Below are positions 5,287 to 64,000 of a stretch of 64,000 bases of DNA, in pieces. The stretch spans positions 222,585 through 286,584 of IMG/VR virus record IMGVR_UViG_3300036770_004723; one strand, given 5' to 3'. The notes below the pieces were generated by a model. The model saw nothing but the letters and a program-made list of their open reading frames with translations. It was not told the DNA's origin and did no database searches. Made by a program: the position numbers and the translations under genes. The stretch's first letter is position 1. Every line of letters starts with the position of its first letter.

Positions 5287-5534
5287 TTTCTATCCTTCCA
5301 TTTTGCGAAGTCGTCAATTTGTTTGAATATTTGGTCAGCACTAAAGTCAAATTCTTTGGAAGGTATTATGATAGTTCCCATTGATGTAGCTAAAGGATCT
5401 GCTTCATAGAAAGGTATGAAAAGTCGTGCCTCTTTCTCATACATAACTATCATAAAAACATTAGAACTTAATCTACCTTTAAACCTGCTTTCTATCAGGC
5501 TTTTAAGTTTGTTTAACTCTAATAATATACTCAT
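5283..5534 (-). CDS. hypothetical protein
   Basis: ATGA-coupled ORF. Confidence 0.7.
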   Translation of the reverse strand: MSILLELNKLKSLIESRFKGRLSSNVFMIVMYEKEARLFIPFYEADPLATSMGTIIIPSKEFDFSADQIFKQIDDFAKWKDRK

Positions 5535-6676
5535 GATTCGCCCTTGTTAATCAAGTCTACTCGATCCATTAGATCTTGGGCTATTTCTTCAGCATCGTTA
5601 TCATTTAACATTGAGTCCAGTGTCGAACAGAAATCATGAATTTCGTACACAAGGTCATCAAATTTATTATTTGTTTCGTCAAAATTAAAACATGAAATGT
5701 GTGCTTCAAATCCGGCAGCTTGTGGGTGGCCACCTCCGCCCATGTCAATTGCAATTGTATTAATTACAACATCATTCTTAGATCGTAAGCTTACTTTACA
5801 CATGCCTTCACTTAGTATGGTAATGGCTGCACCTATATGATTAGTTTCCGTGAATAGAATATTACAGGCTTCGGATCTAAATGATTGAGGTAAATTTACA
5901 CAAGGAATTGTGTAGGTATTTCCCGATGTTTTACCTTTGAATGTAAGTAAAAATTTATTTTCAAGTGCTTCATTTAAAAAGCTTTGACGTATTTCTCTGG
6001 AAATAGTGCCCCTATCGAATAATTTAACAAATTTCTGATCTAAACTATTCATGTTTACTGTGGCAGCAGCTTCTTCTATTGTGAAAATAGTTTCATAGAA
6101 GCCCAACATGATTTCATCTGTACCCAACATCTTTCTATGCCACAAATCTCTGTCTTGTGCGTGACGAATCATTCTAGGTAGGTGATCTAAATAATATTTT
6201 ATATTAAAATATCTTGTTGCTTTTTCTGAATTAGTGTAGGCATTGAAAAAAGCAAAAGCTAATGCACAGCCACTGTATTCGGTATCAAGAATTCCCCAAA
6301 TCTTTTTCTCTTGTATAAGATGATTTAATTCCAGAACTCTAGGTTCATGGTGATCAATCAAACAGATTTTAACACCTGTCTCTAGAAGTGACTCAATTGT
6401 TTGTAGGTCAAAAGAAAAATCAACAAGGATAAGTAAATCACCTTTACCTAATTTCTTAGGTATCATTCCATATTTGTACGCAACATACTCAATTGGAATA
6501 GTTGATATTAGTGTAGTATGCTTCTCAGCAATTAAATCACTTTTTCCTGAATGCCATAGGTAAACACATGCAGCTGAAAGTAAACCATCAGTACAATCGG
6601 CATGATAATAAACACTAATATCAGTAACATCGTTCAACATACCTGATTTAATATTAATATTGTTGTTGGTATTCAT
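5531..6676 (-). CDS. DHH/DHHA1 family phosphoesterase (NrnA/NrnB-like)
   Basis: YHADCTDG, VDFS, IDHH, QDRDLW, SLRS and GGGHPQAAGF motifs. Confidence 0.9.
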   Translation of the reverse strand: MNTNNNINIKSGMLNDVTDISVYYHADCTDGLLSAACVYLWHSGKSDLIAEKHTTLISTIPIEYVAYKYGMIPKKLGKGDLLILVDFSFDLQTIESLLETGVKICLIDHHEPRVLELNHLIQEKKIWGILDTEYSGCALAFAFFNAYTNSEKATRYFNIKYYLDHLPRMIRHAQDRDLWHRKMLGTDEIMLGFYETIFTIEEAAATVNMNSLDQKFVKLFDRGTISREIRQSFLNEALENKFLLTFKGKTSGNTYTIPCVNLPQSFRSEACNILFTETNHIGAAITILSEGMCKVSLRSKNDVVINTIAIDMGGGGHPQAAGFEAHISCFNFDETNNKFDDLVYEIHDFCSTLDSMLNDNDAEEIAQDLMDRVDLINKGES

Positions 6677-30339: not shown

Positions 30340-31377
30340 TTATTTAAAATCTCTTTTAAGAACCAATAAAATATTAGGATCTAATTTAAGTCCTTGAGGC
30401 ACTAAAATATTTTTATAGCAAATCCCTACATGTAGTCTGCAATCGTTGGTTTCGATGTTAAAAATATTATCAAGCAAAAGTGCTGTGTGATCAGGTGCCA
30501 TACTCAACGCAATCTGGTTGAGTAAAATTTCGCGATCTAAATTTTTTAGGTTATGGATTTTGTACGATTTTCCAAGAACACCTGCAATACTTAACAGCAT
30601 ATAACGGAAAGCAGCAATAAAGTCCACATCCAATGTAATGCAGTGACTATTAAACAACTTCTTAAAATCGTAAACTATTAAATTTTCTTCTTTAGCATAA
30701 GAATCTAGCTTTAGATTAAAGCTGTCTTGTATACGTTCAATGTTAGCTACGCTATAAATTTGACTGTAAAATTCTTCACGTCTATACGCATAGAATGGAT
30801 TTTCGTCATCATCAGGTAAATGAGCCTCAGCAATCAAAACTTTAGTGAGTTCTTTTTGTAAGTAACTTGAAATCAAACTTCCTTTGACGCTGTTAATGTT
30901 TCGTATTAAATCAAAACACTGTCTTTCATTTACTTGATCTACTCCGATGCCGTTCTGCCTTAAATAATCCAAAGCAGATTGATCGCGGTAATCATCGACA
31001 TAAATTACATCCGTGATACTTCCAAAATTTACAATTCGTTTAGCACAGTTAGGGCAGGGACTACTCATTACAAAGATAACGAGTTTTTTATAAACACTTA
31101 AATCAAGTGCCTTAAGTTCTGTAAGATTCTTTAACTTATTTAAAGCGTTTTCTTCGGCATGAATAACTGTAGATAATGTTTCACCATTTTTTTCAAATAC
31201 GTGATCTTCCCCACTGGCAACTCCATTACATCCGTCACTTAATATTTGCCAAACTCTCCCTTTTAAATGGCCTACTATAATACTGCCCATTTTCTTTCTT
31301 GTTACTCTAGATCTTTGAGCAGCTGCATACATATCCGGTAAATACGTCAACAACTCTTTATGTTTCTTTAATATCAT
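30340..31377 (-). CDS. dCMP deaminase-like protein with long C-terminal extension
   Basis: GCNG, HAEENA and SPCPNCA Zn motifs, DDYRD; extra ~190 aa. Confidence 0.8.
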   Translation of the reverse strand: MILKKHKELLTYLPDMYAAAQRSRVTRKKMGSIIVGHLKGRVWQILSDGCNGVASGEDHVFEKNGETLSTVIHAEENALNKLKNLTELKALDLSVYKKLVIFVMSSPCPNCAKRIVNFGSITDVIYVDDYRDQSALDYLRQNGIGVDQVNERQCFDLIRNINSVKGSLISSYLQKELTKVLIAEAHLPDDDENPFYAYRREEFYSQIYSVANIERIQDSFNLKLDSYAKEENLIVYDFKKLFNSHCITLDVDFIAAFRYMLLSIAGVLGKSYKIHNLKNLDREILLNQIALSMAPDHTALLLDNIFNIETNDCRLHVGICYKNILVPQGLKLDPNILLVLKRDFK

Positions 31378-40931: not shown

Positions 40932-40997
40932 TTACCTAGATTATTTAAACAATTACCTGTATTGTGTATGCTACAAAGAACATACACTAACAAATAA

Positions 40998-42026
40998 CTA
41001 CTCTTGATAAATGCCATTTACAAATACAGCACTATCAAGCTTTTCGATTACACTGCGACGGTACTCAGTGGTCAAAACATTAAGATCCGTAAAACCGTAG
41101 GACTTAAATGTATTAGCAGAATCGAATAGTGCGATCATAACCTCTATGCTTGCACTCAAGTTAGTTTCAACTTCCGTTTTATCCTCTGCTGTAATTCGGA
41201 ATATAATACGACTATTTTTTTCAACAGAGCCGTAAAGTGCCACGTTTTTATTTTTAACGTGTTCCATGTTTTTAGCATTGGTAAAAGAGTATGAATTACG
41301 CAACTTCGACTCAATCATCCGGAGATCAAATAAGTCAAGTACGGTATCTTCAAACTTTTTACCGTTGAATTCCATTAATGTTAAACCTTTTAACTTCAAA
41401 CAGGTTTCCAGTAATGTGCAAAGTGTATCGAATTCGCTTTCGTTCAAAGTGTTATATGTGATCACATTACTTTTGGTTTCAATAGAGGCCAAAGTAGATA
41501 CATCTGACATATTTTCAAACAGCAAATTGATAAATCCAGAAGCATCAGTTAAAATATTACTATTTCTATGACTTCCATCTAAAGCGTTTGTTATGGATTC
41601 CAAAACTTCGTTACGTTGGATATTAATGCTTGCGTACAAGCTGTCTTGCATTTCATAAAGTAATGCAGCCCAAACTTCTAATACAGGATCATCGGCACCT
41701 ACCGCCAAAAATTCAGAAAAAGAATTGTCATTTTGGTCTAGCTCAGGAATTCGACCTGAGTGTAGTAAGTGTTGAGATCTTGAACAACATTCTTCAATAA
41801 AGAAGTAGGCTAAGGCTTTACATCTCCGATAAAGCAGTGGAGTATTTGCAACTACCATTGCATCATATCCAACTTCAGTTGAAAGAAGCTGCGCCATAAC
41901 ATACGCAAGATCGTTCTCTAGTTTACGAAAGTCGTCTTTAGCCAAAAGATTTTCTTCTGAGGCAGAAACAACTGGAACAAACATATTCCAAGCACGTTGC
42001 ATAATATTACTTGCTGTTAATCGCAT
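40998..42026 (-). CDS. hypothetical protein
   Basis: 342-aa ORF, AAGGA RBS. Confidence 0.8.
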   Translation of the reverse strand: MRLTASNIMQRAWNMFVPVVSASEENLLAKDDFRKLENDLAYVMAQLLSTEVGYDAMVVANTPLLYRRCKALAYFFIEECCSRSQHLLHSGRIPELDQNDNSFSEFLAVGADDPVLEVWAALLYEMQDSLYASINIQRNEVLESITNALDGSHRNSNILTDASGFINLLFENMSDVSTLASIETKSNVITYNTLNESEFDTLCTLLETCLKLKGLTLMEFNGKKFEDTVLDLFDLRMIESKLRNSYSFTNAKNMEHVKNKNVALYGSVEKNSRIIFRITAEDKTEVETNLSASIEVMIALFDSANTFKSYGFTDLNVLTTEYRRSVIEKLDSAVFVNGIYQE

Positions 42027-44358: not shown

Positions 44359-44393
44359 TAATTATAGGTACTGATTATAAGTACCTATAATTA
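44359..44393. repeat. 14-bp perfect inverted repeat (hairpin)
   Basis: taattataggtact-gattata-agtacctataatta upstream of the promoter box. Confidence 0.75.
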
Positions 44394-53018: not shown

Positions 53019-53741
53019 TTATTCGAACAAGAATAAATAACTCACCTTAATATTAACTGGTATACATTGTGATATCTGAAAAGCAAGAGCTTGTTTGAAC
53101 TTATCAAAGTTTTCAATTAACTCTTGCTTTTCTTGTTCTGTTTTTACATCAAAGAAATCGATCATAGGTTTGCTAAAAATATCTTCAGCTGTCCCTTCAT
53201 TCGACATAATTCGTTCACCGTAATAAATCTCAGTAAATGATTTTACTGTTTCTGCTTTATTGAGATTCCTTAGTTCTACAGCATAAAGTGACTCGAATTC
53301 TTCATAGCCATCCGTACCACGCAAATAAGCATAAACACAAAGCAAGTTTACTTTTTTCTTAAAAACAGGTAAATGTTTAAAGCTGGCGAGTTCTGGATCG
53401 TTAATCGTATCACCTGATTGATTTTCAAAATACAGAATTCCCAAAAGACTGTCGCCAAATATTTCTACAAGTGATCTGAAAGTTAGATGATTTAAAGCAC
53501 CATCCGACAAATTCATGCAGTTACGTGGTATACAGAGATTAAGTGTTGTAGCACTGATATGTTCATCTGTCAGTTTAAGTAATACTTTAAATCTTACAGC
53601 CGTGACGTCACCTGTGATCAAATGATCGAAGTGATACATACTAGGTAAATCTTCAACCCACTGATCTTTTACTTTTTCAGCATTTTCACCTGTATAAAAC
53701 AGAGCATCTTTACGGATCGATTCTAAATTAAATGTTTTCAT
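53019..53741 (-). CDS. hypothetical protein
   Basis: AAGGTG RBS. Confidence 0.8.
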   Translation of the reverse strand: MKTFNLESIRKDALFYTGENAEKVKDQWVEDLPSMYHFDHLITGDVTAVRFKVLLKLTDEHISATTLNLCIPRNCMNLSDGALNHLTFRSLVEIFGDSLLGILYFENQSGDTINDPELASFKHLPVFKKKVNLLCVYAYLRGTDGYEEFESLYAVELRNLNKAETVKSFTEIYYGERIMSNEGTAEDIFSKPMIDFFDVKTEQEKQELIENFDKFKQALAFQISQCIPVNIKVSYLFLFE

Positions 53742-53776: not shown

Positions 53777-53815
53777 AATCGACAATAGACACTTACCAAA
53801 ATGTCTATTAGCAAT
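53777..53815. repeat. 39-bp direct repeat copy 1 containing conserved hairpin
   Basis: aatcgacaatagacacttaccaaaatgtctattagcaat, identical to 54199..54237. Confidence 0.9.
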
Positions 53816-53863
53816 ATCAAGAAACAAACGGAAAAGCTTTTGGTCAATATGCCTTATCAAGGT

Positions 53864-54178
53864 TTAACGCTTTAAATCGTATTCAGCAAAGCGGTCATAC
53901 CACGCAGAACTTGCATTTTGTTGACTGCCCATACATTCATCGAATACTAACCTTGTAATTTCTTCTTCTAAGTTGTTGCATTTTTCCAAATCTAATTCAC
54001 CAGTTTTATCATAACGCGCTTCCCATTTCAATTTGTTATTTACAGGATAAGCGTGAATGTACAAATGACTTTTTGCCATTGTTTCCATGTCATAAACAAC
54101 TGTCCCATTAAAGCTTCGGATAGTAATTGTATGACCTTTAGCCGCTAATTCATTCATTGCTTTTACAATACGTAACAT
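53864..54178 (-). CDS. hypothetical protein
   Basis: GAGGA RBS; flanked by 39-bp direct repeats. Confidence 0.75.
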   Translation of the reverse strand: MLRIVKAMNELAAKGHTITIRSFNGTVVYDMETMAKSHLYIHAYPVNNKLKWEARYDKTGELDLEKCNNLEEEITRLVFDECMGSQQNASSAWYDRFAEYDLKR

Positions 54179-54198
54179 AAAAAATTCCTCGTCGGTTT

Positions 54199-54237
54199 AA
54201 TCGACAATAGACACTTACCAAAATGTCTATTAGCAAT
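54199..54237. repeat. 39-bp direct repeat copy 2 containing conserved hairpin
   Basis: Identical to 53777..53815. Confidence 0.9.
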
Positions 54238-54246
54238 TTTAAAGTT

Positions 54247-54642
54247 TTACTTGGATCTAGTGCGTTTAGTTTTAGGTAACGTCTGACCTACATCAAGCAA
54301 CACAGTATTGTCAATTACGTCATGGAAAAATTCACGTATAACCGATACTTTATCTAAGGTCAAAGAATCGTGTAGCAAATGGTAAGCTAAAGAAGATTCT
54401 GTATCTTCGTTAGGGTTATATCTTACATTTTTAAGATATTGATTTACAATATCTAAGGGTATTGTGGGTGTCCTGACATCTGAATTTAAAACTTTTTCTA
54501 CGGTATTTGCATTTATTAGTTCGCTATTCCCAGTAGTTTCATTTAATACATGGAAGTAGGTTGTATCTGAAGCCAACAGAACAACAAAAGTTTCTTTACG
54601 GCCAGCGACAGTAACACGCATCATAGCTTTTAATTCTTTCAT
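54247..54642 (-). CDS. hypothetical protein
   Basis: AGGA RBS. Confidence 0.75.
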   Translation of the reverse strand: MKELKAMMRVTVAGRKETFVVLLASDTTYFHVLNETTGNSELINANTVEKVLNSDVRTPTIPLDIVNQYLKNVRYNPNEDTESSLAYHLLHDSLTLDKVSVIREFFHDVIDNTVLLDVGQTLPKTKRTRSK

Positions 54643-54671
54643 GACGTTTTCCTAAATAAGATTAAACTTTA

Positions 54672-55184
54672 TTACAAAAATAAGTTGGGGTATTTTGACG
54701 TTATACCTAAATTTTTAGCCAGCTCAGCCAAAGCAGAAAACATATCTTCAACGTTTTCTGAGTCAACGTACTCTCTTGTGCACAGTTTTGTAAATTCTAT
54801 AGCAGCTTGTTCACTGCTGGCTACACCAAGCATAATATTTAAAGTATGCCGTAGTTCCTTCGTGCTAGCCGAAAGCTGCATTGATTTATGTTTTATGCAG
54901 TTATTGACAACTTTTTCAGTCAAACCTGCTGTAACAGCCCTTTTATATTTTTCGATATTTACCTTCATCTGTGCCTGAGTCTCAATTAAAGCATTTTGTA
55001 AGGTAACAGCAGCAGACATTTGAAAAATTCTTAGACCTAACGGATAAGGCGCGTTCTGCTCCTCCATGAGTTTGTTATCTTTTAACCGATGGTTGTAAAA
55101 AGATGCCAGACTTTCATGAAGCTCACTTACACTTTGTAAGTCAGGTGTCAAACGAAAATCTTTATCAGGAAACATTACAAACAT
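54672..55184 (-). CDS. hypothetical protein
   Basis: GAGGTG RBS. Confidence 0.75.
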   Translation of the reverse strand: MFVMFPDKDFRLTPDLQSVSELHESLASFYNHRLKDNKLMEEQNAPYPLGLRIFQMSAAVTLQNALIETQAQMKVNIEKYKRAVTAGLTEKVVNNCIKHKSMQLSASTKELRHTLNIMLGVASSEQAAIEFTKLCTREYVDSENVEDMFSALAELAKNLGITSKYPNLFL

Positions 55185-55202
55185 AATTCACCTCGTTAAA
55201 TT

Positions 55203-55231
55203 AATTTATTGTGTTAAGAAATACATGTCAA
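55203..55231 (-). promoter_or_regulatory. possible sigma70 promoter
   Basis: TTGACA-17-TAAATT upstream of 54672..55184. Confidence 0.4.
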
Positions 55232-55325
55232 GACACACTGATCTGATCAAATTTACTTTTACCGATTACAGTGAACAAAATAAACATAAGCAAATCAGGC
55301 GCTCTAGTAATATACATCAATGTTT

Positions 55326-56354
55326 TTAATAACCACACGAAGATCCGCCAACGTAGCCACATCTAACACCGTGAACTTTTTTAACAGATAATCTTTCCGT
55401 ACTGTCACGCATTCTGTTAGCAGGCACTTTATACTGTTTGGTGTAGTCAGTGAAATTGAATAACTCTTTTCGTGACCAATCAGAATAAGCGATTCCATCT
55501 TGGTGGAAAACAACTTCTGTTATTTTCTTTAAAATTGCATTTGGCTCGTAAGCACTTGCCTTTAAGTAAGCTCTGTTTTTATTAGAAAGTTTGACACTCT
55601 TTGTAAAGCATGAAGGACAATAATCCATTTCAGGCGCTTTACTATCTACGTCTCCCTGTTGCGCAAATACCTTATCAAACATCTTTAAAAGTTGCGGCTT
55701 CGCCACTTTACCTTTTTTACTTGAAGCATACGCATGTAATGACTTAAAGATTTTCTTTTGATTATAGTCTACACGAAATACAACATTGATATGCGGATTA
55801 GATAACATTAATTCAAGCGCTTGTCCCATTTCCCATTCGATGTTATGAATATTCTGCTCACAAACAACAAAGTTTATGTGGAACGATCTTACACCCAAAA
55901 TCTTACGGAACTGAGTAAGCTTGTTTATGTCGTACATTGAACTGATACCCATGATTTTCATATTTGTATCCGCATCAAAAGAATGCAGTGATACATTCAT
56001 AAAATCCAACTTGCACTTCAATGTAGTTGGATCAATTAACGTATTTAAAACTGCCATAGTTTTATTTGCTGATTCTAAAAACTGGCCATTGGTTGTAATG
56101 CCTACACGCTTAATCGGCGTAAGTTTCAGAATGTTATCGACCGTGGAATGTAAAAGCTTAAGGTTTAGGGTAGGTTCACCTCCTGACAATGAAACGTGGT
56201 CAATTACATGCGAAACCTTTTTAATTGAAGTAACTAAGTTAGATAACCAACTTTGCTTACTCGCTTTCTTTTCCATTTCTTTTTCAGGACAAAAGACACA
56301 ATTTGCGTTACACGTAACAGGCAGTATTGCCGTAAAGTTTCTTAACTGCTCCAT
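55326..56354 (-). CDS. radical SAM protein
   Basis: CNANCVFC (CxxxCxxC), LSGGEPT, ITTNG and NVSLH motifs. Confidence 0.9.
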   Translation of the reverse strand: MEQLRNFTAILPVTCNANCVFCPEKEMEKKASKQSWLSNLVTSIKKVSHVIDHVSLSGGEPTLNLKLLHSTVDNILKLTPIKRVGITTNGQFLESANKTMAVLNTLIDPTTLKCKLDFMNVSLHSFDADTNMKIMGISSMYDINKLTQFRKILGVRSFHINFVVCEQNIHNIEWEMGQALELMLSNPHINVVFRVDYNQKKIFKSLHAYASSKKGKVAKPQLLKMFDKVFAQQGDVDSKAPEMDYCPSCFTKSVKLSNKNRAYLKASAYEPNAILKKITEVVFHQDGIAYSDWSRKELFNFTDYTKQYKVPANRMRDSTERLSVKKVHGVRCGYVGGSSCGY

Positions 56355-56384
56355 AATTCACCTTAGCCATATTAATTTATTGTA

Positions 56385-56603
56385 TTAAGAAATACGTGTA
56401 ACAGTCAAGAAACCTTTATCCAGAGATAAAGTTTGACCTACCTGTAGATCACTGATCTGGTCAAACTCTTGGTCTTCCCAGTCAGTGACTTCTGCTAAAC
56501 CAAGCAATGTAAAATTACCTTTAGTATATACCATATCCCTTTCAGCTTCTATATTTACGTAAAGACTGAAAAGTTTTTTAATCTTTTTCTTAGATTGTTT
56601 CAT
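56385..56603 (-). CDS. small hypothetical protein
   Basis: AAGGTG RBS. Confidence 0.7.
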   Translation of the reverse strand: MKQSKKKIKKLFSLYVNIEAERDMVYTKGNFTLLGLAEVTDWEDQEFDQISDLQVGQTLSLDKGFLTVTRIS

Positions 56604-56621
56604 CGAATCACCTTCAATAGG

Positions 56622-56951
56622 TTAACTTAAAAAAGTACCAAAGACTCTAGGCCAGTAAAGTGTTTCACCATCGACATCTTCACCACTAGCTAAAAGTTCT
56701 AGTATTTTAGCGTTGTCGTCCTCCACTACAAAAAATAATGGAATCCACTCTTCTGTTTCACGTAAATATTTGAAACGAAGTTCTGACCATTCAGCAAAGT
56801 TACTCAGATCTTCATTGCTATGGGAAGTTTGAACAACTTTTTTCTCACCATCTGAGTTAAAGAAGTAGAGAAAAGGCGAATCACGCAAAGCAAGTTCAGT
56901 ATCAATTTGTTTCAGCGTGTAAACTTTACCGCTGACTGGAGACAGATTCAT
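56622..56951 (-). CDS. hypothetical protein
   Basis: AAGGA RBS. Confidence 0.75.
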   Translation of the reverse strand: MNLSPVSGKVYTLKQIDTELALRDSPFLYFFNSDGEKKVVQTSHSNEDLSNFAEWSELRFKYLRETEEWIPLFFVVEDDNAKILELLASGEDVDGETLYWPRVFGTFLS

Positions 56952-56987
56952 AAATAATTCCTTTATTACTATAATTAAAGATTAATT

Positions 56988-57020
56988 TATTGCGTACACT
57001 ATTAAGAATGTACGCTAATA
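56988..57020 (-). promoter_or_regulatory. conserved 5'-UTR hairpin (ACAUU..AGUGU family)
   Basis: GCGTACATT-CTTAAT-AGTGTACGC. Confidence 0.6.
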
Positions 57021-57029
57021 TTAAACTCG

Positions 57030-57485
57030 TTACGCTACACGCTTAACTACCCAATCTTCTTCATGGTCTAAAGAAAATTCTTCCCCTAAATACATAAATT
57101 TCAAACGTGCTTTGTCACTGTCTTTGTAGCACAGGCCATCTGTATCTTCAATAGCATCCGCGAAAGTCAAAGGATCTGAACTTTCATTGTTGTGGATAAA
57201 TACCCAACGCATTGATTCGGATTTTGCTTGATCAATAACGCTATAAAAATCCGGTACAACAGGGGCAATAAAAGTTATTGCCGCCGTGTCAATTAAAACA
57301 CATTTATGACTGTCTGCATGTGCATCGCCAACATTGAACAAAACATTCAGATTAAATGAACGTTTCATGTTACGCGAAAATGCGTGTTGCCCTGCGAAGT
57401 CTAATTCAATTACAATACCGCACAAAACGGTATCTTCTAAAGTTGCTTCAACAATAGAGCCAATTTTTAAAGTAGAATAATCCAT
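57030..57485 (-). CDS. two-domain hypothetical protein (SH3/KOW-like N-domain)
   Basis: N-domain similar to 63550..63855, C-domain similar to 56385..56603; GGAG RBS. Confidence 0.75.
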   Translation of the reverse strand: MDYSTLKIGSIVEATLEDTVLCGIVIELDFAGQHAFSRNMKRSFNLNVLFNVGDAHADSHKCVLIDTAAITFIAPVVPDFYSVIDQAKSESMRWVFIHNNESSDPLTFADAIEDTDGLCYKDSDKARLKFMYLGEEFSLDHEEDWVVKRVA

Positions 57486-57496
57486 ACTTATCTCCG

Positions 57497-57790
57497 TTAT
57501 TTAAGCATAAAACGATTTGCGGCCTTTACCAACTCTTCTGCATACTCAGTAGAGTGGCATTCTGCAAGTGTAACGTTGTTGGCATCTACCAAGATCCACT
57601 GCTTGTTGTATAGAGGCAATGCCAATTCAGCAGGGTCATTGAATAAATGATCGCACATTTTTTGAAGTTCTTGATTTTGTTGAACAGCAATCTTTAATTG
57701 TTCTGTTCGTGACTTAAGACAAAACATTAACCAAATTAAAGTGATGACCACTAAAATGTTTAACAACGAATTAAGTGTATTAATATCCAT
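57497..57790 (-). CDS. membrane-anchored hypothetical protein
   Basis: N-terminal TM. Confidence 0.7.
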   Translation of the reverse strand: MDINTLNSLLNILVVITLIWLMFCLKSRTEQLKIAVQQNQELQKMCDHLFNDPAELALPLYNKQWILVDANNVTLAECHSTEYAEELVKAANRFMLK

Positions 57791-57800
57791 AAGTTTATCC

Positions 57801-58121
57801 TTAGTATAATTGAACTTTTTTATTGCGATTATATGAACGATATTCGTAATGCTGAATTTCGCCGTTAGTAAAGTGGGATGGAACTAATTGGCGTTTTGTT
57901 TGCCACCCACTATACGCATTTACATCAAACAACAGATCTTCAAGTTGCGTATACAAACCGTCAAGTAAACCAAGGTAGTAATCCACAGACTTTAGTTGAT
58001 ATGAGTCTGGTAAACAAGTACATTGATTTTCTAGTCTCCAGATGATTAATGCAAGTTCTGGAATTTTTTCATCGGTAATTAATGAAATACGTTTTTTATT
58101 TGTTTCCGATACTTTCGACAT
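57801..58121 (-). CDS. hypothetical protein, first gene after boxed promoter
   Basis: ORF downstream of 58183 promoter. Confidence 0.7.
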   Translation of the reverse strand: MSKVSETNKKRISLITDEKIPELALIIWRLENQCTCLPDSYQLKSVDYYLGLLDGLYTQLEDLLFDVNAYSGWQTKRQLVPSHFTNGEIQHYEYRSYNRNKKVQLY

Positions 58122-58182
58122 TTTCTGACTCTCGCTGTTAACAGCAAACTTTTAACAGGCTGTTTGCCTTACCTATGAGATC

Positions 58183-58240
58183 ATTATATCAAAATAAACC
58201 ATATAGGTATATGCTTATTATTGACACACTTAGATCAGTT
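58183..58240 (-). promoter_or_regulatory. boxed sigma70-like early promoter
   Basis: AACTGATCTAAGTGTGTCAA-9-TATACC-17-TATAAT. Confidence 0.85.
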
Positions 58241-58579
58241 AGAGTTAAATACCTTACGTAAATAAATCTTTGTCCGGATTTCATCGCGCTCTAGCTTATT
58301 AAAATCCTTGTTAATAAATTTGAGCAATTCAAGTGTTACATGTGTACCTGCTTTAGTCAGGCAGTCGAAAACAAAAATGTTATCTAGCCGGTAAACGGCA
58401 CTGTTCTTGAGCGTATATACTGTAAAGCCTACTCGTATGTTATAATCAGGATAAATATCACAAGCAACTGCTTTGATCGACACCGTAAAATAAGTGTATA
58501 TTAAAATCAATACAATTGCAGCAATCACGCCAGTTAATATAAAGGCAAGAGTTTCATTTTGCATAAGTACCTCAAACAA
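58235..58579 (-). CDS. membrane-anchored hypothetical protein (stop codon lies in promoter box)
   Basis: N-terminal TM; ends AAC TGA within box. Confidence 0.7.
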   Translation of the reverse strand: MFEVLMQNETLAFILTGVIAAIVLILIYTYFTVSIKAVACDIYPDYNIRVGFTVYTLKNSAVYRLDNIFVFDCLTKAGTHVTLELLKFINKDFNKLERDEIRTKIYLRKVFNSN

Positions 58580-58587
58580 GAAAAATT

Positions 58588-59040
58588 TTAAATAACGTAG
58601 ACAGTAGTTATTGTTGTGGTTCCAACCATGTGGTCTACATGGTTTATTTCTATATAACTAGCTGCATGTAACATATCTAAAAAGTCGTCATAATAAAGTG
58701 TTTTATACGTATTATGAACATCTTTTGAAGTTTGTCTAAGAGTCACTACATCATACATTATCAACTTATTTTTGGCTAAGCGCGTAATATATTTTGATAA
58801 GACCGCAATTATGAACTGATCACTACTGACCGAGAAGTTTACTCGGCCTTGACCTAAATTGTTAAACTTATTTTTCGCGTACAGCATGAATTCCGTGTCT
58901 ACGAAAAAATCAAGTGTCTGGCCTTGTAAACAAATTTGAATAGATATCAATATATGCTCAGCCGGAAAAAGTTTGTAGCTAACGTTCGATGCGTTTAAAT
59001 ATGTTGCAACATCCTTTAAATCTTCAAGATTTAATTCCAT
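58588..59040 (-). CDS. hypothetical protein
   Basis: GAGG RBS. Confidence 0.75.
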   Translation of the reverse strand: MELNLEDLKDVATYLNASNVSYKLFPAEHILISIQICLQGQTLDFFVDTEFMLYAKNKFNNLGQGRVNFSVSSDQFIIAVLSKYITRLAKNKLIMYDVVTLRQTSKDVHNTYKTLYYDDFLDMLHAASYIEINHVDHMVGTTTITTVYVI

Positions 59041-59049
59041 ATTTACCTC

Positions 59050-59077
59050 AAAGAGAAAAGGCCAAATTAATGGCCTT
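59050..59077 (-). terminator. intrinsic terminator
   Basis: AAGGCCA-TTAATT-TGGCCTT-TTCTCTTT. Confidence 0.7.
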
Positions 59078-59085
59078 GATCTTAA

Positions 59086-59283
59086 TTAAGCTCGAACTTC
59101 AAGACGGCCATAGGCATAAATAGCCTCTTTACGTTCTTGAGTAAAATCACCTGACACCATTTTCAAATGCGGCGGCGAAGTTTCATAAACTTCTTTGACT
59201 ACAACAGATGAACCATCGTTAAAACTGTAACGCCATTCATTTGGTTCACCAGTTAAAATATCGTCAACAACTCTTAGTAGCAT
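59086..59283 (-). CDS. small hypothetical protein
   Basis: AAGGAG RBS. Confidence 0.7.
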   Translation of the reverse strand: MLLRVVDDILTGEPNEWRYSFNDGSSVVVKEVYETSPPHLKMVSGDFTQERKEAIYAYGRLEVRA

Positions 59284-59295
59284 GTGTAGCTCCTT

Positions 59296-59628
59296 TTATT
59301 TAGTTAGTAAAATTTCAACAGTTAAATTAAATTCAGGTGAATCATCAATGAAAGAATTATTACCTTTGATAGTATCATCGAAGAAGTCTTTTTCTTCTTG
59401 AATAAGAGTCAGCATGTAAGAAGATTTTGTGCCTGGAAACGCTTTTGCGTATTCTCTCAAGGCTTTTAAGATGATCTGCCAATGGCGTCGGCCAGTTAAG
59501 TGCAATCTTCTTTGATCTTCGCCTTCATTAAGAGTCAGACCAAAAAAGTTTGCCAGTTGGCTACTGCCCGTGAAATACTCATAAACTACATTAGATGTTT
59601 TGATTTTGATTTCTGTAGATTGTGCCAT
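59296..59628 (-). CDS. hypothetical protein, first gene after boxed promoter
   Basis: AGGA RBS. Confidence 0.75.
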   Translation of the reverse strand: MAQSTEIKIKTSNVVYEYFTGSSQLANFFGLTLNEGEDQRRLHLTGRRHWQIILKALREYAKAFPGTKSSYMLTLIQEEKDFFDDTIKGNNSFIDDSPEFNLTVEILLTK

Positions 59629-59664
59629 GTTTATTTTCCTATATAAATACTTAAGTAGTTTCCA

Positions 59665-59690
59665 TGGAGTACACTAAAAAATGTACTCTA
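59665..59690 (-). promoter_or_regulatory. conserved 5'-UTR hairpin (ACAUU..AGUGU family)
   Basis: TAGAGTACATT-TTTT-AGTGTACTCCA. Confidence 0.6.
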
Positions 59691-59720
59691 GTAAACAACT
59701 TTTTGATTTAAACTGTGTAC

Positions 59721-59778
59721 ATTATACCAAAATAAGCTATATATGTATATGCGTATTTTTGACACACTTCGATCAGTT
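59721..59778 (-). promoter_or_regulatory. boxed sigma70-like early promoter
   Basis: AACTGATCGAAGTGTGTCAA-9-TATACA-17-TATAAT. Confidence 0.85.
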
Positions 59779-59780
59779 GG

Positions 59781-60017
59781 CTATTTAACGTCAATGCGTT
59801 TTTGATGTAGTGCCAACTGTATACTTAAATACTGTAGATCTTCGGCAGTTAAAAACATTGTGCCGTCAATACCAAGGTAAGCCTTACCTGCATTTTCTGT
59901 AAGATTCACTACAGCTTCATCAGTTTGTGTATCGTCATCACCTTCGAAAAAACCAACTGTCACATTAAACTTTACTGTATTTGTTAAACACATTTTAGAT
60001 TCCTTAATCTGAAGCAC
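59781..60017 (-). CDS. hypothetical protein
   Basis: Likely start MCLTN after AAGGA. Confidence 0.65.
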   Translation of the reverse strand: MLQIKESKMCLTNTVKFNVTVGFFEGDDDTQTDEAVVNLTENAGKAYLGIDGTMFLTAEDLQYLSIQLALHQKRIDVK

Positions 60018-63897: not shown

Positions 63898-63955
63898 ATT
63901 ATATCAAAAAATAGCAGGCTAGTAAACCATTGTTTTTGACACAGCTCGATCAGTT
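63898..63955 (-). promoter_or_regulatory. boxed sigma70-like early promoter
   Basis: AACTGATCGAGCTGTGTCAA-9-TTTACT-17-TATAAT. Confidence 0.85.
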
Positions 63956-64000
63956 GGCTTTAATCGCAAGTTTAAATGAAAAAAGGCTGGTCAATCTTTT

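What the first reader, a model, noticed from the sequence alone, without database searches (positions are those of the whole stretch)
53777..59690. Family of 5'-UTR hairpins with covarying stems and a conserved ACAUU-loop-AGUGU top
Seen on the transcribed strand: AAUAG-ACAUU-UUGGUA-AGUGU-CUAUU (53777 and 54199), GCGU-ACAUU-CUUAAU-AGUGU-ACGC (56988) and AGAGU-ACAUU-UUUU-AGUGU-ACUCC (59665). The lower stems change sequence but keep pairing. The top keeps a U-G wobble that works only on the - strand RNA. None has a clean U-tract, and all sit 20-45 nt before a start codon in the early region. A related hairpin lies at 44359-44393. Inference: an undescribed cis-RNA motif such as a protein-binding, antitermination (boxB/put-like), RNase-processing or mRNA-stabilising element that protects phage early mRNA.
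Basis: partly seen in the sequence, partly recalled or inferred. Interest (0 to 1): 0.65.

Follow-up and report, generated by a model that had tools for sequence, protein, structure and literature searches.

The report
T7-type RNase III sites in jumbo phage
The hairpins are real and conserved, but they are not a new kind of RNA element: they match the well-studied RNase III cutting signals that phage T7 uses to split its early multi-gene messages, here found in an uncultured jumbo phage.

Summary
Five minus-strand hairpins in the window (four distinct sequences) share a 9-bp stem. Its top is an invariant U-A closing pair over a U.G wobble, and the lower pairs covary.

A covariance model built only from them found five more sites in the early region of the closest relative, a 261-kb phage. 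One lies after an orthologous gene whose protein is only 33% identical.

The same model also recovered RNase III sites in T7-group phages. In T7 its five best hits lie in the five intergenic gaps where RNase III sites R1.1, R18.5, R1.3, R1 and R0.3 belong. In T3 all four hits fall inside annotated "RNase III recognition site" stem-loops.

The invariant UA/UG top is the published distal box of E. coli RNase III. Proximal-box positions, a 2x3 internal loop or C/U mismatch, a lower stem, and the placement between a stop codon and the next start codon all mirror T7 R1.1 and R0.3.

Best explanation (about 0.8): host RNase III cuts the polycistronic early mRNA on the 3' side of each hairpin. The hairpin then caps and stabilises the upstream message.

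Cleavage itself is untested and the host is unknown. The "undescribed motif" reading is not supported; this is a new member of a known kind. Near-identical sites occur in T4-like, T5-like and T7-like phages.

The parts
53778..53815 (-). RNase III-type processing signal. It has a 12-bp upper stem with a UA/UG top, a C/U mismatch, and a 4-bp lower stem. The predicted cut is between 53782 and 53781. It lies 50 nt after the stop of ORF 53864-54178, and its 34-nt core ends 38 nt before the ATG of ORF 53019-53741.
54199..54238 (-). An identical second copy of the same signal. The predicted cut is between 54204 and 54203. It lies 11 nt after the stop of ORF 54247-54642, and its 34-nt core ends 23 nt before the ATG of ORF 53864-54178.
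56979..57028 (-). RNase III-type signal with a 9-bp upper stem, a bulge, and a lower stem. The predicted cut is between 56989 and 56988. It lies 9 nt after the stop of ORF 57030-57485, and its 34-nt core ends 35 nt before the ATG of ORF 56622-56951. This is an orthologous site to G001 244998. It carries C-G at proximal-box position 2, which is inhibitory for E. coli RNase III in vitro.
59653..59701 (-). RNase III-type signal in the leader just downstream of an early promoter, placed like T7 R0.3. It has a 9-bp upper stem, a UUUU loop and a lower stem. The predicted cut is between 59664 and 59663. Its 34-nt core ends 31 nt before the ATG of ORF 59296-59628.
40947..41003 (-). A newly found fifth type. 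It has a 9-bp upper stem with two extra compensatory pairs (UG/CA instead of CA/UG) and keeps the UA/UG top. It has a 2x3 internal loop exactly as in T7 R1.1 and a 14-bp lower stem. The predicted cut is between 40961 and 40960. It lies 5 nt after the stop of ORF 40998-42026 and upstream of an ACTGTAAATA promoter-like motif.
44359..44393 (-). A doubtful relative. It is a perfect 14-bp palindrome hairpin with C-G at the wobble position, and it folds equally well on both strands. It sits between a gene end and an early promoter.
59721..59775 (-). Early sigma-70-type promoter with an extended -10 (TGgTATAAT) and a conserved upstream element (AACTGATC..RGTGTGTCAAAA). It drives the transcript that carries the 59662 site.

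Best explanation
The hairpins are RNase III processing signals of the kind used in the early region of phages T7 and T3.

Proposed mechanism:
- Host RNA polymerase starts at sigma-70-type early promoters and makes polycistronic early transcripts.
- Each intercistronic signal folds into a two-tier hairpin: a lower stem, then a small internal loop or mismatch, then a 9-12 bp upper stem.
- Host RNase III docks on the upper stem through the U-A / U.G distal box next to the loop and the A/U-rich proximal box.
- It cuts one strand, on the 3' side of the internal loop, 10 nt 3' of the wobble G.
- The upstream message then ends in a protective 3' hairpin. The downstream message starts about 20-50 nt before its start codon.

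Shown here: the fold, the covariation, conservation in a distant relative, and sequence and structure equivalence to annotated T3 sites and homologous T7 sites.

Inferred: that RNase III actually cuts, the exact cut position, and the stabilising effect.
For: 1. Cross-recognition. Model R2 was built only from the 9 jumbo-phage hairpins. On T7, its top five hits are the intergenic sites before genes 1.1, 18.5, 1.3, 1 and 0.3. On T3, all 4 hits with E below 10 in the 38.2-kb genome fall inside stem-loops annotated "RNase III recognition site" R1.3, R1, R1.1 and R0.5.

2. Distal box. PMC1540722 reports a stringent need for a U.G pair at the second distal-box position, with canonical UA/UG. All 14 jumbo and metagenome sites have exactly UA/UG there.

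3. Proximal box. Position 2 is A-U or U-A in 12 of 14 sites. Position 4 is A-U or a mismatch, including the same C/U as natural R1.1.

4. Architecture. The sites have an upper stem, a 2x3 internal loop or C/U mismatch, and a lower stem of 4-14 bp, the same as T7 R1.1 and R0.3 folded the same way. Loop sequence and length vary, as RNase III tolerates.

5. Placement. The sites lie after stop codons and before the next SD/ATG, only on the transcribed strand, and only in the early region. One lies right after a promoter, like T7 R0.3.

6. Conservation. There are five sites in relative G001. One lies after an orthologous gene of 33% protein identity, with four stem pairs changed, three of them on both sides.

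7. A host factor is likely. The same motif occurs in T4-like Aeh1, T5-like Ceto and T7-like metagenomic contigs. The phage encodes no RNase III of its own.
Against: There is no RNA data for this phage, so cleavage is not shown.

The host is unknown, and RNase III rules come from the E. coli enzyme.

The 56987 site has C-G at proximal-box position 2, which cut reactivity about 16-fold in the minimal substrate.

Individual T7 and T3 hits are weak (E 0.003 to 4.5). Their weight comes from where they fall.

The T7 cleavage coordinates used to place the cut come from my memory of Dunn and Studier 1983, not from a tool.

Sequence identity across unrelated phages goes beyond what known RNase III determinants require. 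An additional or different reader of the motif is therefore not excluded.

The Erwinia/Dickeya-type relatives lack the motif.
Confidence: 0.8

Rival explanations
1. The hairpins are plain 3'-end stabilisers or weak factor-dependent terminators that work without RNase III. They would block 3' exonucleases or pause polymerase at gene ends.
For: Most copies start 0-11 nt after a stop codon. The 40959 copy precedes a promoter-like motif.
Against: There is no U-tract, and none is flagged as terminator-like, while the genome has many classical GC-rich terminators. A generic stabiliser would not need an invariant U.G wobble at a fixed distance. The 59662 copy lies just after a promoter. The model finds RNase III sites in T3 and T7.
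Confidence: 0.07
2. RNase III or another double-strand RNA-binding protein (phage- or host-encoded) binds the hairpins without cutting. The sites would then act as translational or stability operators.
For: RNase III can bind without cleaving, and uncoupling motifs exist. The 56987 site carries an antideterminant. Sequence conservation exceeds the known RNase III needs.
Against: Proximal-box position 4 is never G-C or C-G, the known catalytic antideterminant. The geometry equals that of cleaved T7 sites. The sites do not overlap the SD or start codon.
Confidence: 0.06
3. It is a DNA-level element. Candidates are a single-strand DNA hairpin for an HUH/RAYT-type enzyme, an N4-like hairpin promoter, or a palindromic operator.
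For: There is a conserved 5' flank (T-R-Y-T-A) next to an imperfect palindrome. Near-identical copies occur in unrelated phages, which could suggest mobility.
Against: Loop length varies from 4 to 6, which is a poor fit for a dimeric operator. The wobble pair becomes an A/C mismatch on the other strand, and two of the three distinct hairpins fold clearly better on the transcribed strand. All copies are on the transcribed strand. No single-subunit RNA polymerase was detected, though the control for that search was uninformative. The lower-stem pairs covary as RNA pairs, including G.U.
Confidence: 0.03
4. It is a boxB/nut- or put-like antitermination signal read by a phage protein or by RNA polymerase.
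For: The hairpins lie in early transcripts, and one is in a promoter-proximal leader.
Against: Loops are unconserved while the stem top is invariant, the reverse of boxB (from my own knowledge of lambda N-boxB). There are many copies per genome, placed after stop codons. The motif is shared by phages with unrelated proteomes.
Confidence: 0.02

Closest known systems
Phage T7/T3 early RNase III processing signals (R0.3, R0.5, R1, R1.1, R1.3; also R18.5)
   Same: - Two-tier hairpin with a small asymmetric internal loop.
- UA/UG or CG/UG distal box 10 nt from the cut.
- A/U-rich proximal box, with a C/U or A/A mismatch at position 4.
- Variable loop.
- Intercistronic placement in host-polymerase early transcripts, including one site right after the promoters.
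- Recognised by the same covariance model.
   Different: - The carrier is a 287-kb jumbo phage unrelated to T7.
- The stem sequence is AU-richer (UAAUAG.CAUU rather than UCAAGGUCAU).
- Some sites have a simple C/U mismatch instead of a 2x3 loop.
- Cleavage is not demonstrated.
- T7's RNase III-stimulating protein kinase was not looked for.
Lambda RNase III sites (N leader, sib)
   Same: A host RNase III target in phage early transcripts that alters message stability and expression (from my own knowledge).
   Different: The lambda sites are longer, near-perfect duplexes cut on both strands, and sib destabilises the message. No sequence comparison was made here.
Lambda boxB / HK022 put antitermination RNAs
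   Same: Small hairpins in early leaders.
   Different: Recognition there depends on the loop or on a two-hairpin fold. Here the loops vary freely and the stem top is fixed.
REP elements and their RAYT transposases
   Same: Imperfect extragenic palindromes after stop codons, with a conserved 5' flank. They can stabilise upstream mRNA (from my own knowledge).
   Different: REPs are DNA-mobilised, high-copy chromosomal repeats. Here there are 5-6 copies, confined to the early region, matching RNase III determinants.

Membership tests
RNase III processing signal, T7 R1.1 class | Distal box: a U-A pair then a U.G wobble at a fixed distance from the cut (PMC1540722) | tested here: met
   UA/UG is present in 14 of 14 jumbo and metagenome sites and invariant in 8 of 8 distinct model sequences.
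RNase III processing signal, T7 R1.1 class | Proximal box free of antideterminants: no G-C or C-G at position 2 or position 4 | tested here: inconclusive
   Position 4 is never G-C or C-G. Position 2 is A-U or U-A in 12 of 14 sites, but C-G in the window 56987 site and U.G in its G001 ortholog.
RNase III processing signal, T7 R1.1 class | About 11 bp between the cut and the loop, plus a lower stem, with an internal loop or mismatch that limits cutting to one strand | tested here: met
   Folds show a 9-12 bp upper stem, a 2x3 loop or C/U mismatch, and a 4-14 bp lower stem. T7 R1.1 and R0.3 fold alike.
RNase III processing signal, T7 R1.1 class | Sequence and structure similarity to experimentally defined or annotated sites | tested here: met
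   In T3, 4 of 4 R2 hits lie in annotated RNase III stem-loops. In T7, the top 5 hits lie at the homologous intergenic sites.
RNase III processing signal, T7 R1.1 class | Intercistronic position in polycistronic transcripts made by host RNA polymerase | tested here: met
   The sites follow stop codons and precede start codons. Sigma-70-type extended -10 promoters lie upstream. A sigma-factor gene is present and no single-subunit polymerase was found, though the control for that search was uninformative.
RNase III processing signal, T7 R1.1 class | Actual cleavage by RNase III at the predicted bond | not testable with these tools
   No RNA runs hold this phage.
Intrinsic (rho-independent) terminator | A G+C-rich stem followed by a U-tract | tested here: not met
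   The hairpins are not flagged by the terminator scan and have no U-tract. The genome's real terminators look different.
boxB/nut antitermination hairpin | A conserved loop read by an N-type protein | tested here: not met
   Loops differ in sequence and in length, from 4 to 6 nt.
Any Rfam family | A match at the gathering score | tested here: not met
   There is no match in the window or the loci. T7 itself also gives no Rfam match, so this says nothing about novelty.

The most novel reading that the evidence does not exclude
The AU-rich variant of the signal (UAAUAGGCAUU - loop - AGUGCCUAUUG) is nearly identical in a jumbo phage lineage, a T4-like Aeromonas phage, a T5-like Vibrio phage and T7-like metagenomic phages. 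It may therefore be a horizontally exchanged cassette, or a sub-class tuned to a non-E. coli RNase III or to an extra, unknown reader. In either case it would be more than independent convergence on generic RNase III rules.
Probability: 0.3. Interest if true: 0.45.

Novelty: new member of a known kind. Interest (0 to 1): 0.3.

Why it matters
It turns an apparently new RNA motif into an annotatable, testable feature. It predicts where the early messages of an uncultured jumbo phage are cut.

It also shows that T7-style RNase III punctuation of early operons is not confined to T7-like phages.

Rfam has no model for these sites, and T7 itself gives no Rfam hit. The small covariance model built here could therefore mark such sites in phage genomes. 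The site preferences may also hint at a gamma-proteobacterial host.

Tried and rejected
- **Rfam.** Searches at gathering and at permissive thresholds found nothing relevant.
- **GenBank phages by DNA.** Megablast of the region found no match.
- **More relatives.** Searches through the radical-SAM protein and the 151-aa flanking protein, and an exact hairpin pattern in IMG/VR, found only G001 as a carrier. The Erwinia/Dickeya-type relatives have no sites.
- **In-frame back-up stop.** I considered whether the conserved 5' flank T-R-Y-T-A-R is an in-frame back-up stop. It is in frame in only some copies, so I dropped the idea.
- **N4-like hairpin promoter or REP/RAYT-like DNA hairpin.** I rejected these on strand asymmetry, variable loop length and the T7/T3 result.
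- **Intrinsic terminator.** Rejected.
- **Phage-encoded RNase III.** None was found.
- **RNA-seq.** No RNA run holds the phage. Only DNA contigs were laid, over 5,991 letters.
- **T7 site coordinates.** Two papers that might give them were not held. One paper search found nothing.
Full report
**What is there**

The window is the last 64 kb of a 286,584-bp virus record with 34.6% G+C. Its best holder is a subsurface metagenome.

Its kin are jumbo phages. A radical-SAM gene at 55326-56354 (-) is about 45% identical in protein to Erwinia, Dickeya and Yersinia jumbo phages. It is 55-62% identical to one 261-kb IMG/VR phage, here called G001.

- The copies at 53780-53813 and 54202-54235 are identical.
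- The copy at 59662-59693 recurs at genome positions 7-38, inside a 127-nt perfect repeat.
- Each folds much better than shuffles. The first two distinct hairpins fold clearly worse on the plus strand, and the third folds about equally on both strands.
- None has a U-tract and none is flagged as a terminator. The genome has many ordinary G+C-rich terminators.

**Is it more than chance?**

The bare top pattern is not significant alone, but the whole hairpin is. A covariance model built from the four copies (R1) found the following:
- a fifth type in the window at 40959-40992 (-);
- four sites in G001;
- after rebuilding as R2 from 9 sequences, a fifth site in G001.

All hits lie on the transcribed strand within 19 kb (this phage) or 12 kb (G001) of early-type genes. 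The next-best hits have E above 1.

On the 8 distinct sequences, 72 of 72 cells pair, 7 of 9 pairs show changes on both sides, and no shuffle of 500 does as well. That alignment was fitted to the model, which favours pairing.

The two pairs next to the loop never vary: a U-A pair and below it a U.G wobble. The loop varies in sequence and in length (4-6 nt).

One site is positionally orthologous. The hairpin after ORF 57030-57485 corresponds to the G001 hairpin after its ortholog, which is 33% identical. Four stem pairs differ between the two, three of them on both sides. The top of the stem and the 5' flank are kept.

A hot-spring metagenome contig is 97.6% identical over 57650-59710. In the 59662 site it differs only by one extra base in the loop.

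**What it is**

An exact search for the longer stem version in metagenome contigs gave five further distinct sites. Each lies just after a stop codon and about 20-35 nt before the next start codon.

Two of the contigs encode T7-like proteins: DNA polymerase, primase-helicase, exonuclease and a single-subunit RNA polymerase. This recalled the T7 R1.1 RNase III site, so I tested the idea directly.

- **T7.** R2 had seen no T7-group sequence. Its five best hits on T7 are the intergenic hairpins before genes 1.1, 18.5, 1.3, 1 and 0.3.
- **T3.** All four hits in the whole genome lie inside stem-loops annotated "RNase III recognition site" R1.3, R1, R1.1 and R0.5. Those features cover well under 1% of the searched sequence.

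The biochemistry fits. For E. coli RNase III, the distal box is a positive determinant with canonical UA/UG and a stringent need for the U.G pair. Loop sequence does not matter, and 11 bp between the cut and the loop is the minimum (PMC1540722). The proximal box dislikes G-C or C-G at positions 2 and 4, and natural R1.1 has a U/C opposition at position 4.

Mapped onto the sites:
- All 14 jumbo and metagenome sites have UA/UG.
- Position 2 is A-U or U-A in 12 of 14.
- Position 4 is A-U or a mismatch (A/A, A/C, C/U), as in T7 and T3.

Folding with flanks gives the same two-tier shape as T7 R1.1 and R0.3: an upper stem, a 2x3 internal loop or a single C/U mismatch, and a lower stem of 4-14 bp.

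**How it most likely works**

Early transcripts start at sigma-70-type promoters with an extended -10 and a shared upstream element. About ten copies of this promoter type occur in the genome. The phage carries a sigma-factor gene, and no single-subunit polymerase was detected, though the control for that search was uninformative. G001 has a sigma-70-family gene right after one of its sites.

Host RNase III would cut once, on the 3' side of the internal loop, 10 nt beyond the wobble G. By analogy with T7, the predicted cuts are at these minus-strand positions:
- 53782|53781
- 54204|54203
- 56989|56988
- 59664|59663
- 40961|40960

The T7 cleavage coordinates behind this analogy are from my memory of Dunn and Studier 1983.

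The upstream message then ends in a hairpin that resists 3' exonucleases. The 59662 site lies just after a promoter, which parallels T7 R0.3 after promoters A1-A3. The phage has no RNase III of its own.

**Weak points**

- Cleavage is not shown, and no RNA data exist for this phage.
- The host is unknown.
- The 56987 site has C-G at proximal-box position 2, which is inhibitory in vitro.
- The T7 and T3 hits are individually weak.
- Erwinia/Dickeya-type relatives lack the motif.
- The hairpin at 44359-44393 is at best a degenerate relative, with C-G in place of the wobble.

**Novelty**

The kind of element is textbook. Its presence in a jumbo phage lineage was not found in the paper library.

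The same AU-rich version also occurs in T5-like Vibrio phage Ceto, right after gene A1 and again in the terminal repeat. It occurs twice in T4-like Aeromonas phage Aeh1.

Rfam has no model for these sites, and T7 itself gives no Rfam match. Rfam's silence therefore did not indicate novelty.

Verdict: a real, conserved, functional-looking element that is a new member of a known kind.

Noticed in passing
window 59761, 58223, 49673, 44328, 29720 (-); genome 96804, 96091, 95921, 81824 (-): A family of about ten early promoters. Each has a conserved upstream block, AACTGATC-NN-RGTGTGTCAA(A), about 34 nt before an extended -10 (TGnTATAAT). The upstream block could bind a host or phage factor.
   Followed up: partly
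genome-wide, e.g. window 40924, 36022, 28152, 17863, 9679 (-): The motif (A)ACTGTAAAT(A) occurs 31 times, and about 20 copies lie just upstream of genes. It is probably the promoter read with the phage sigma factor, whose Sigma70_r2 match is at genome 115908-116093 (-).
   Followed up: partly
window 56981, 56371, 55200 (-): Three upstream regions share CAATAAATTAAT. Two of them share a longer block, GTATTTCTTAAYACAATAAATTAAT, 16-17 nt before the start codon. The 5' arm and loop of the 56987 site resemble this block apart from a 7-nt insertion that creates the 3' arm. The origin and function are unexplained.
   Followed up: partly
genome 1-168 vs window 59656-59782 and 63933-64000: The first 127 nt of the record are 100% identical to window 59656-59782 (promoter plus RNase III-type site). 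Genome 101-168 is 97% identical to the last 68 nt of the window. This is either a repeated promoter module or an assembly artefact at the contig end.
   Followed up: partly
L032, L033 (metagenome contigs); Vibrio phage Ceto 6921-6954 and 126861-126894; Aeromonas phage Aeh1 70796-70829 and 71448-71481: Near-identical copies of the AU-rich site version occur in T7-like, T5-like and T4-like phages. Each lies between a stop codon and the next gene. This points either to a shared host enzyme preference or to horizontal spread.
   Followed up: partly
L001 2511-3167 (G001 250519-251175): In the relative, a sigma-70-family gene (regions 2 and 4) lies 28 nt after one of the sites.
   Followed up: yes
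window 30340-31377 (-), 5531-6676 (-), 55326-56354 (-): The window encodes a cytidine/dCMP deaminase-like (APOBEC-like) protein, a DHH/DHHA1 phosphoesterase and a radical-SAM protein.
   Followed up: no
window 57650-59710: A hot-spring metagenome from 2025 holds a contig 97.6% identical to this stretch. A close relative of this subsurface phage therefore occurs in a second habitat.
   Followed up: no
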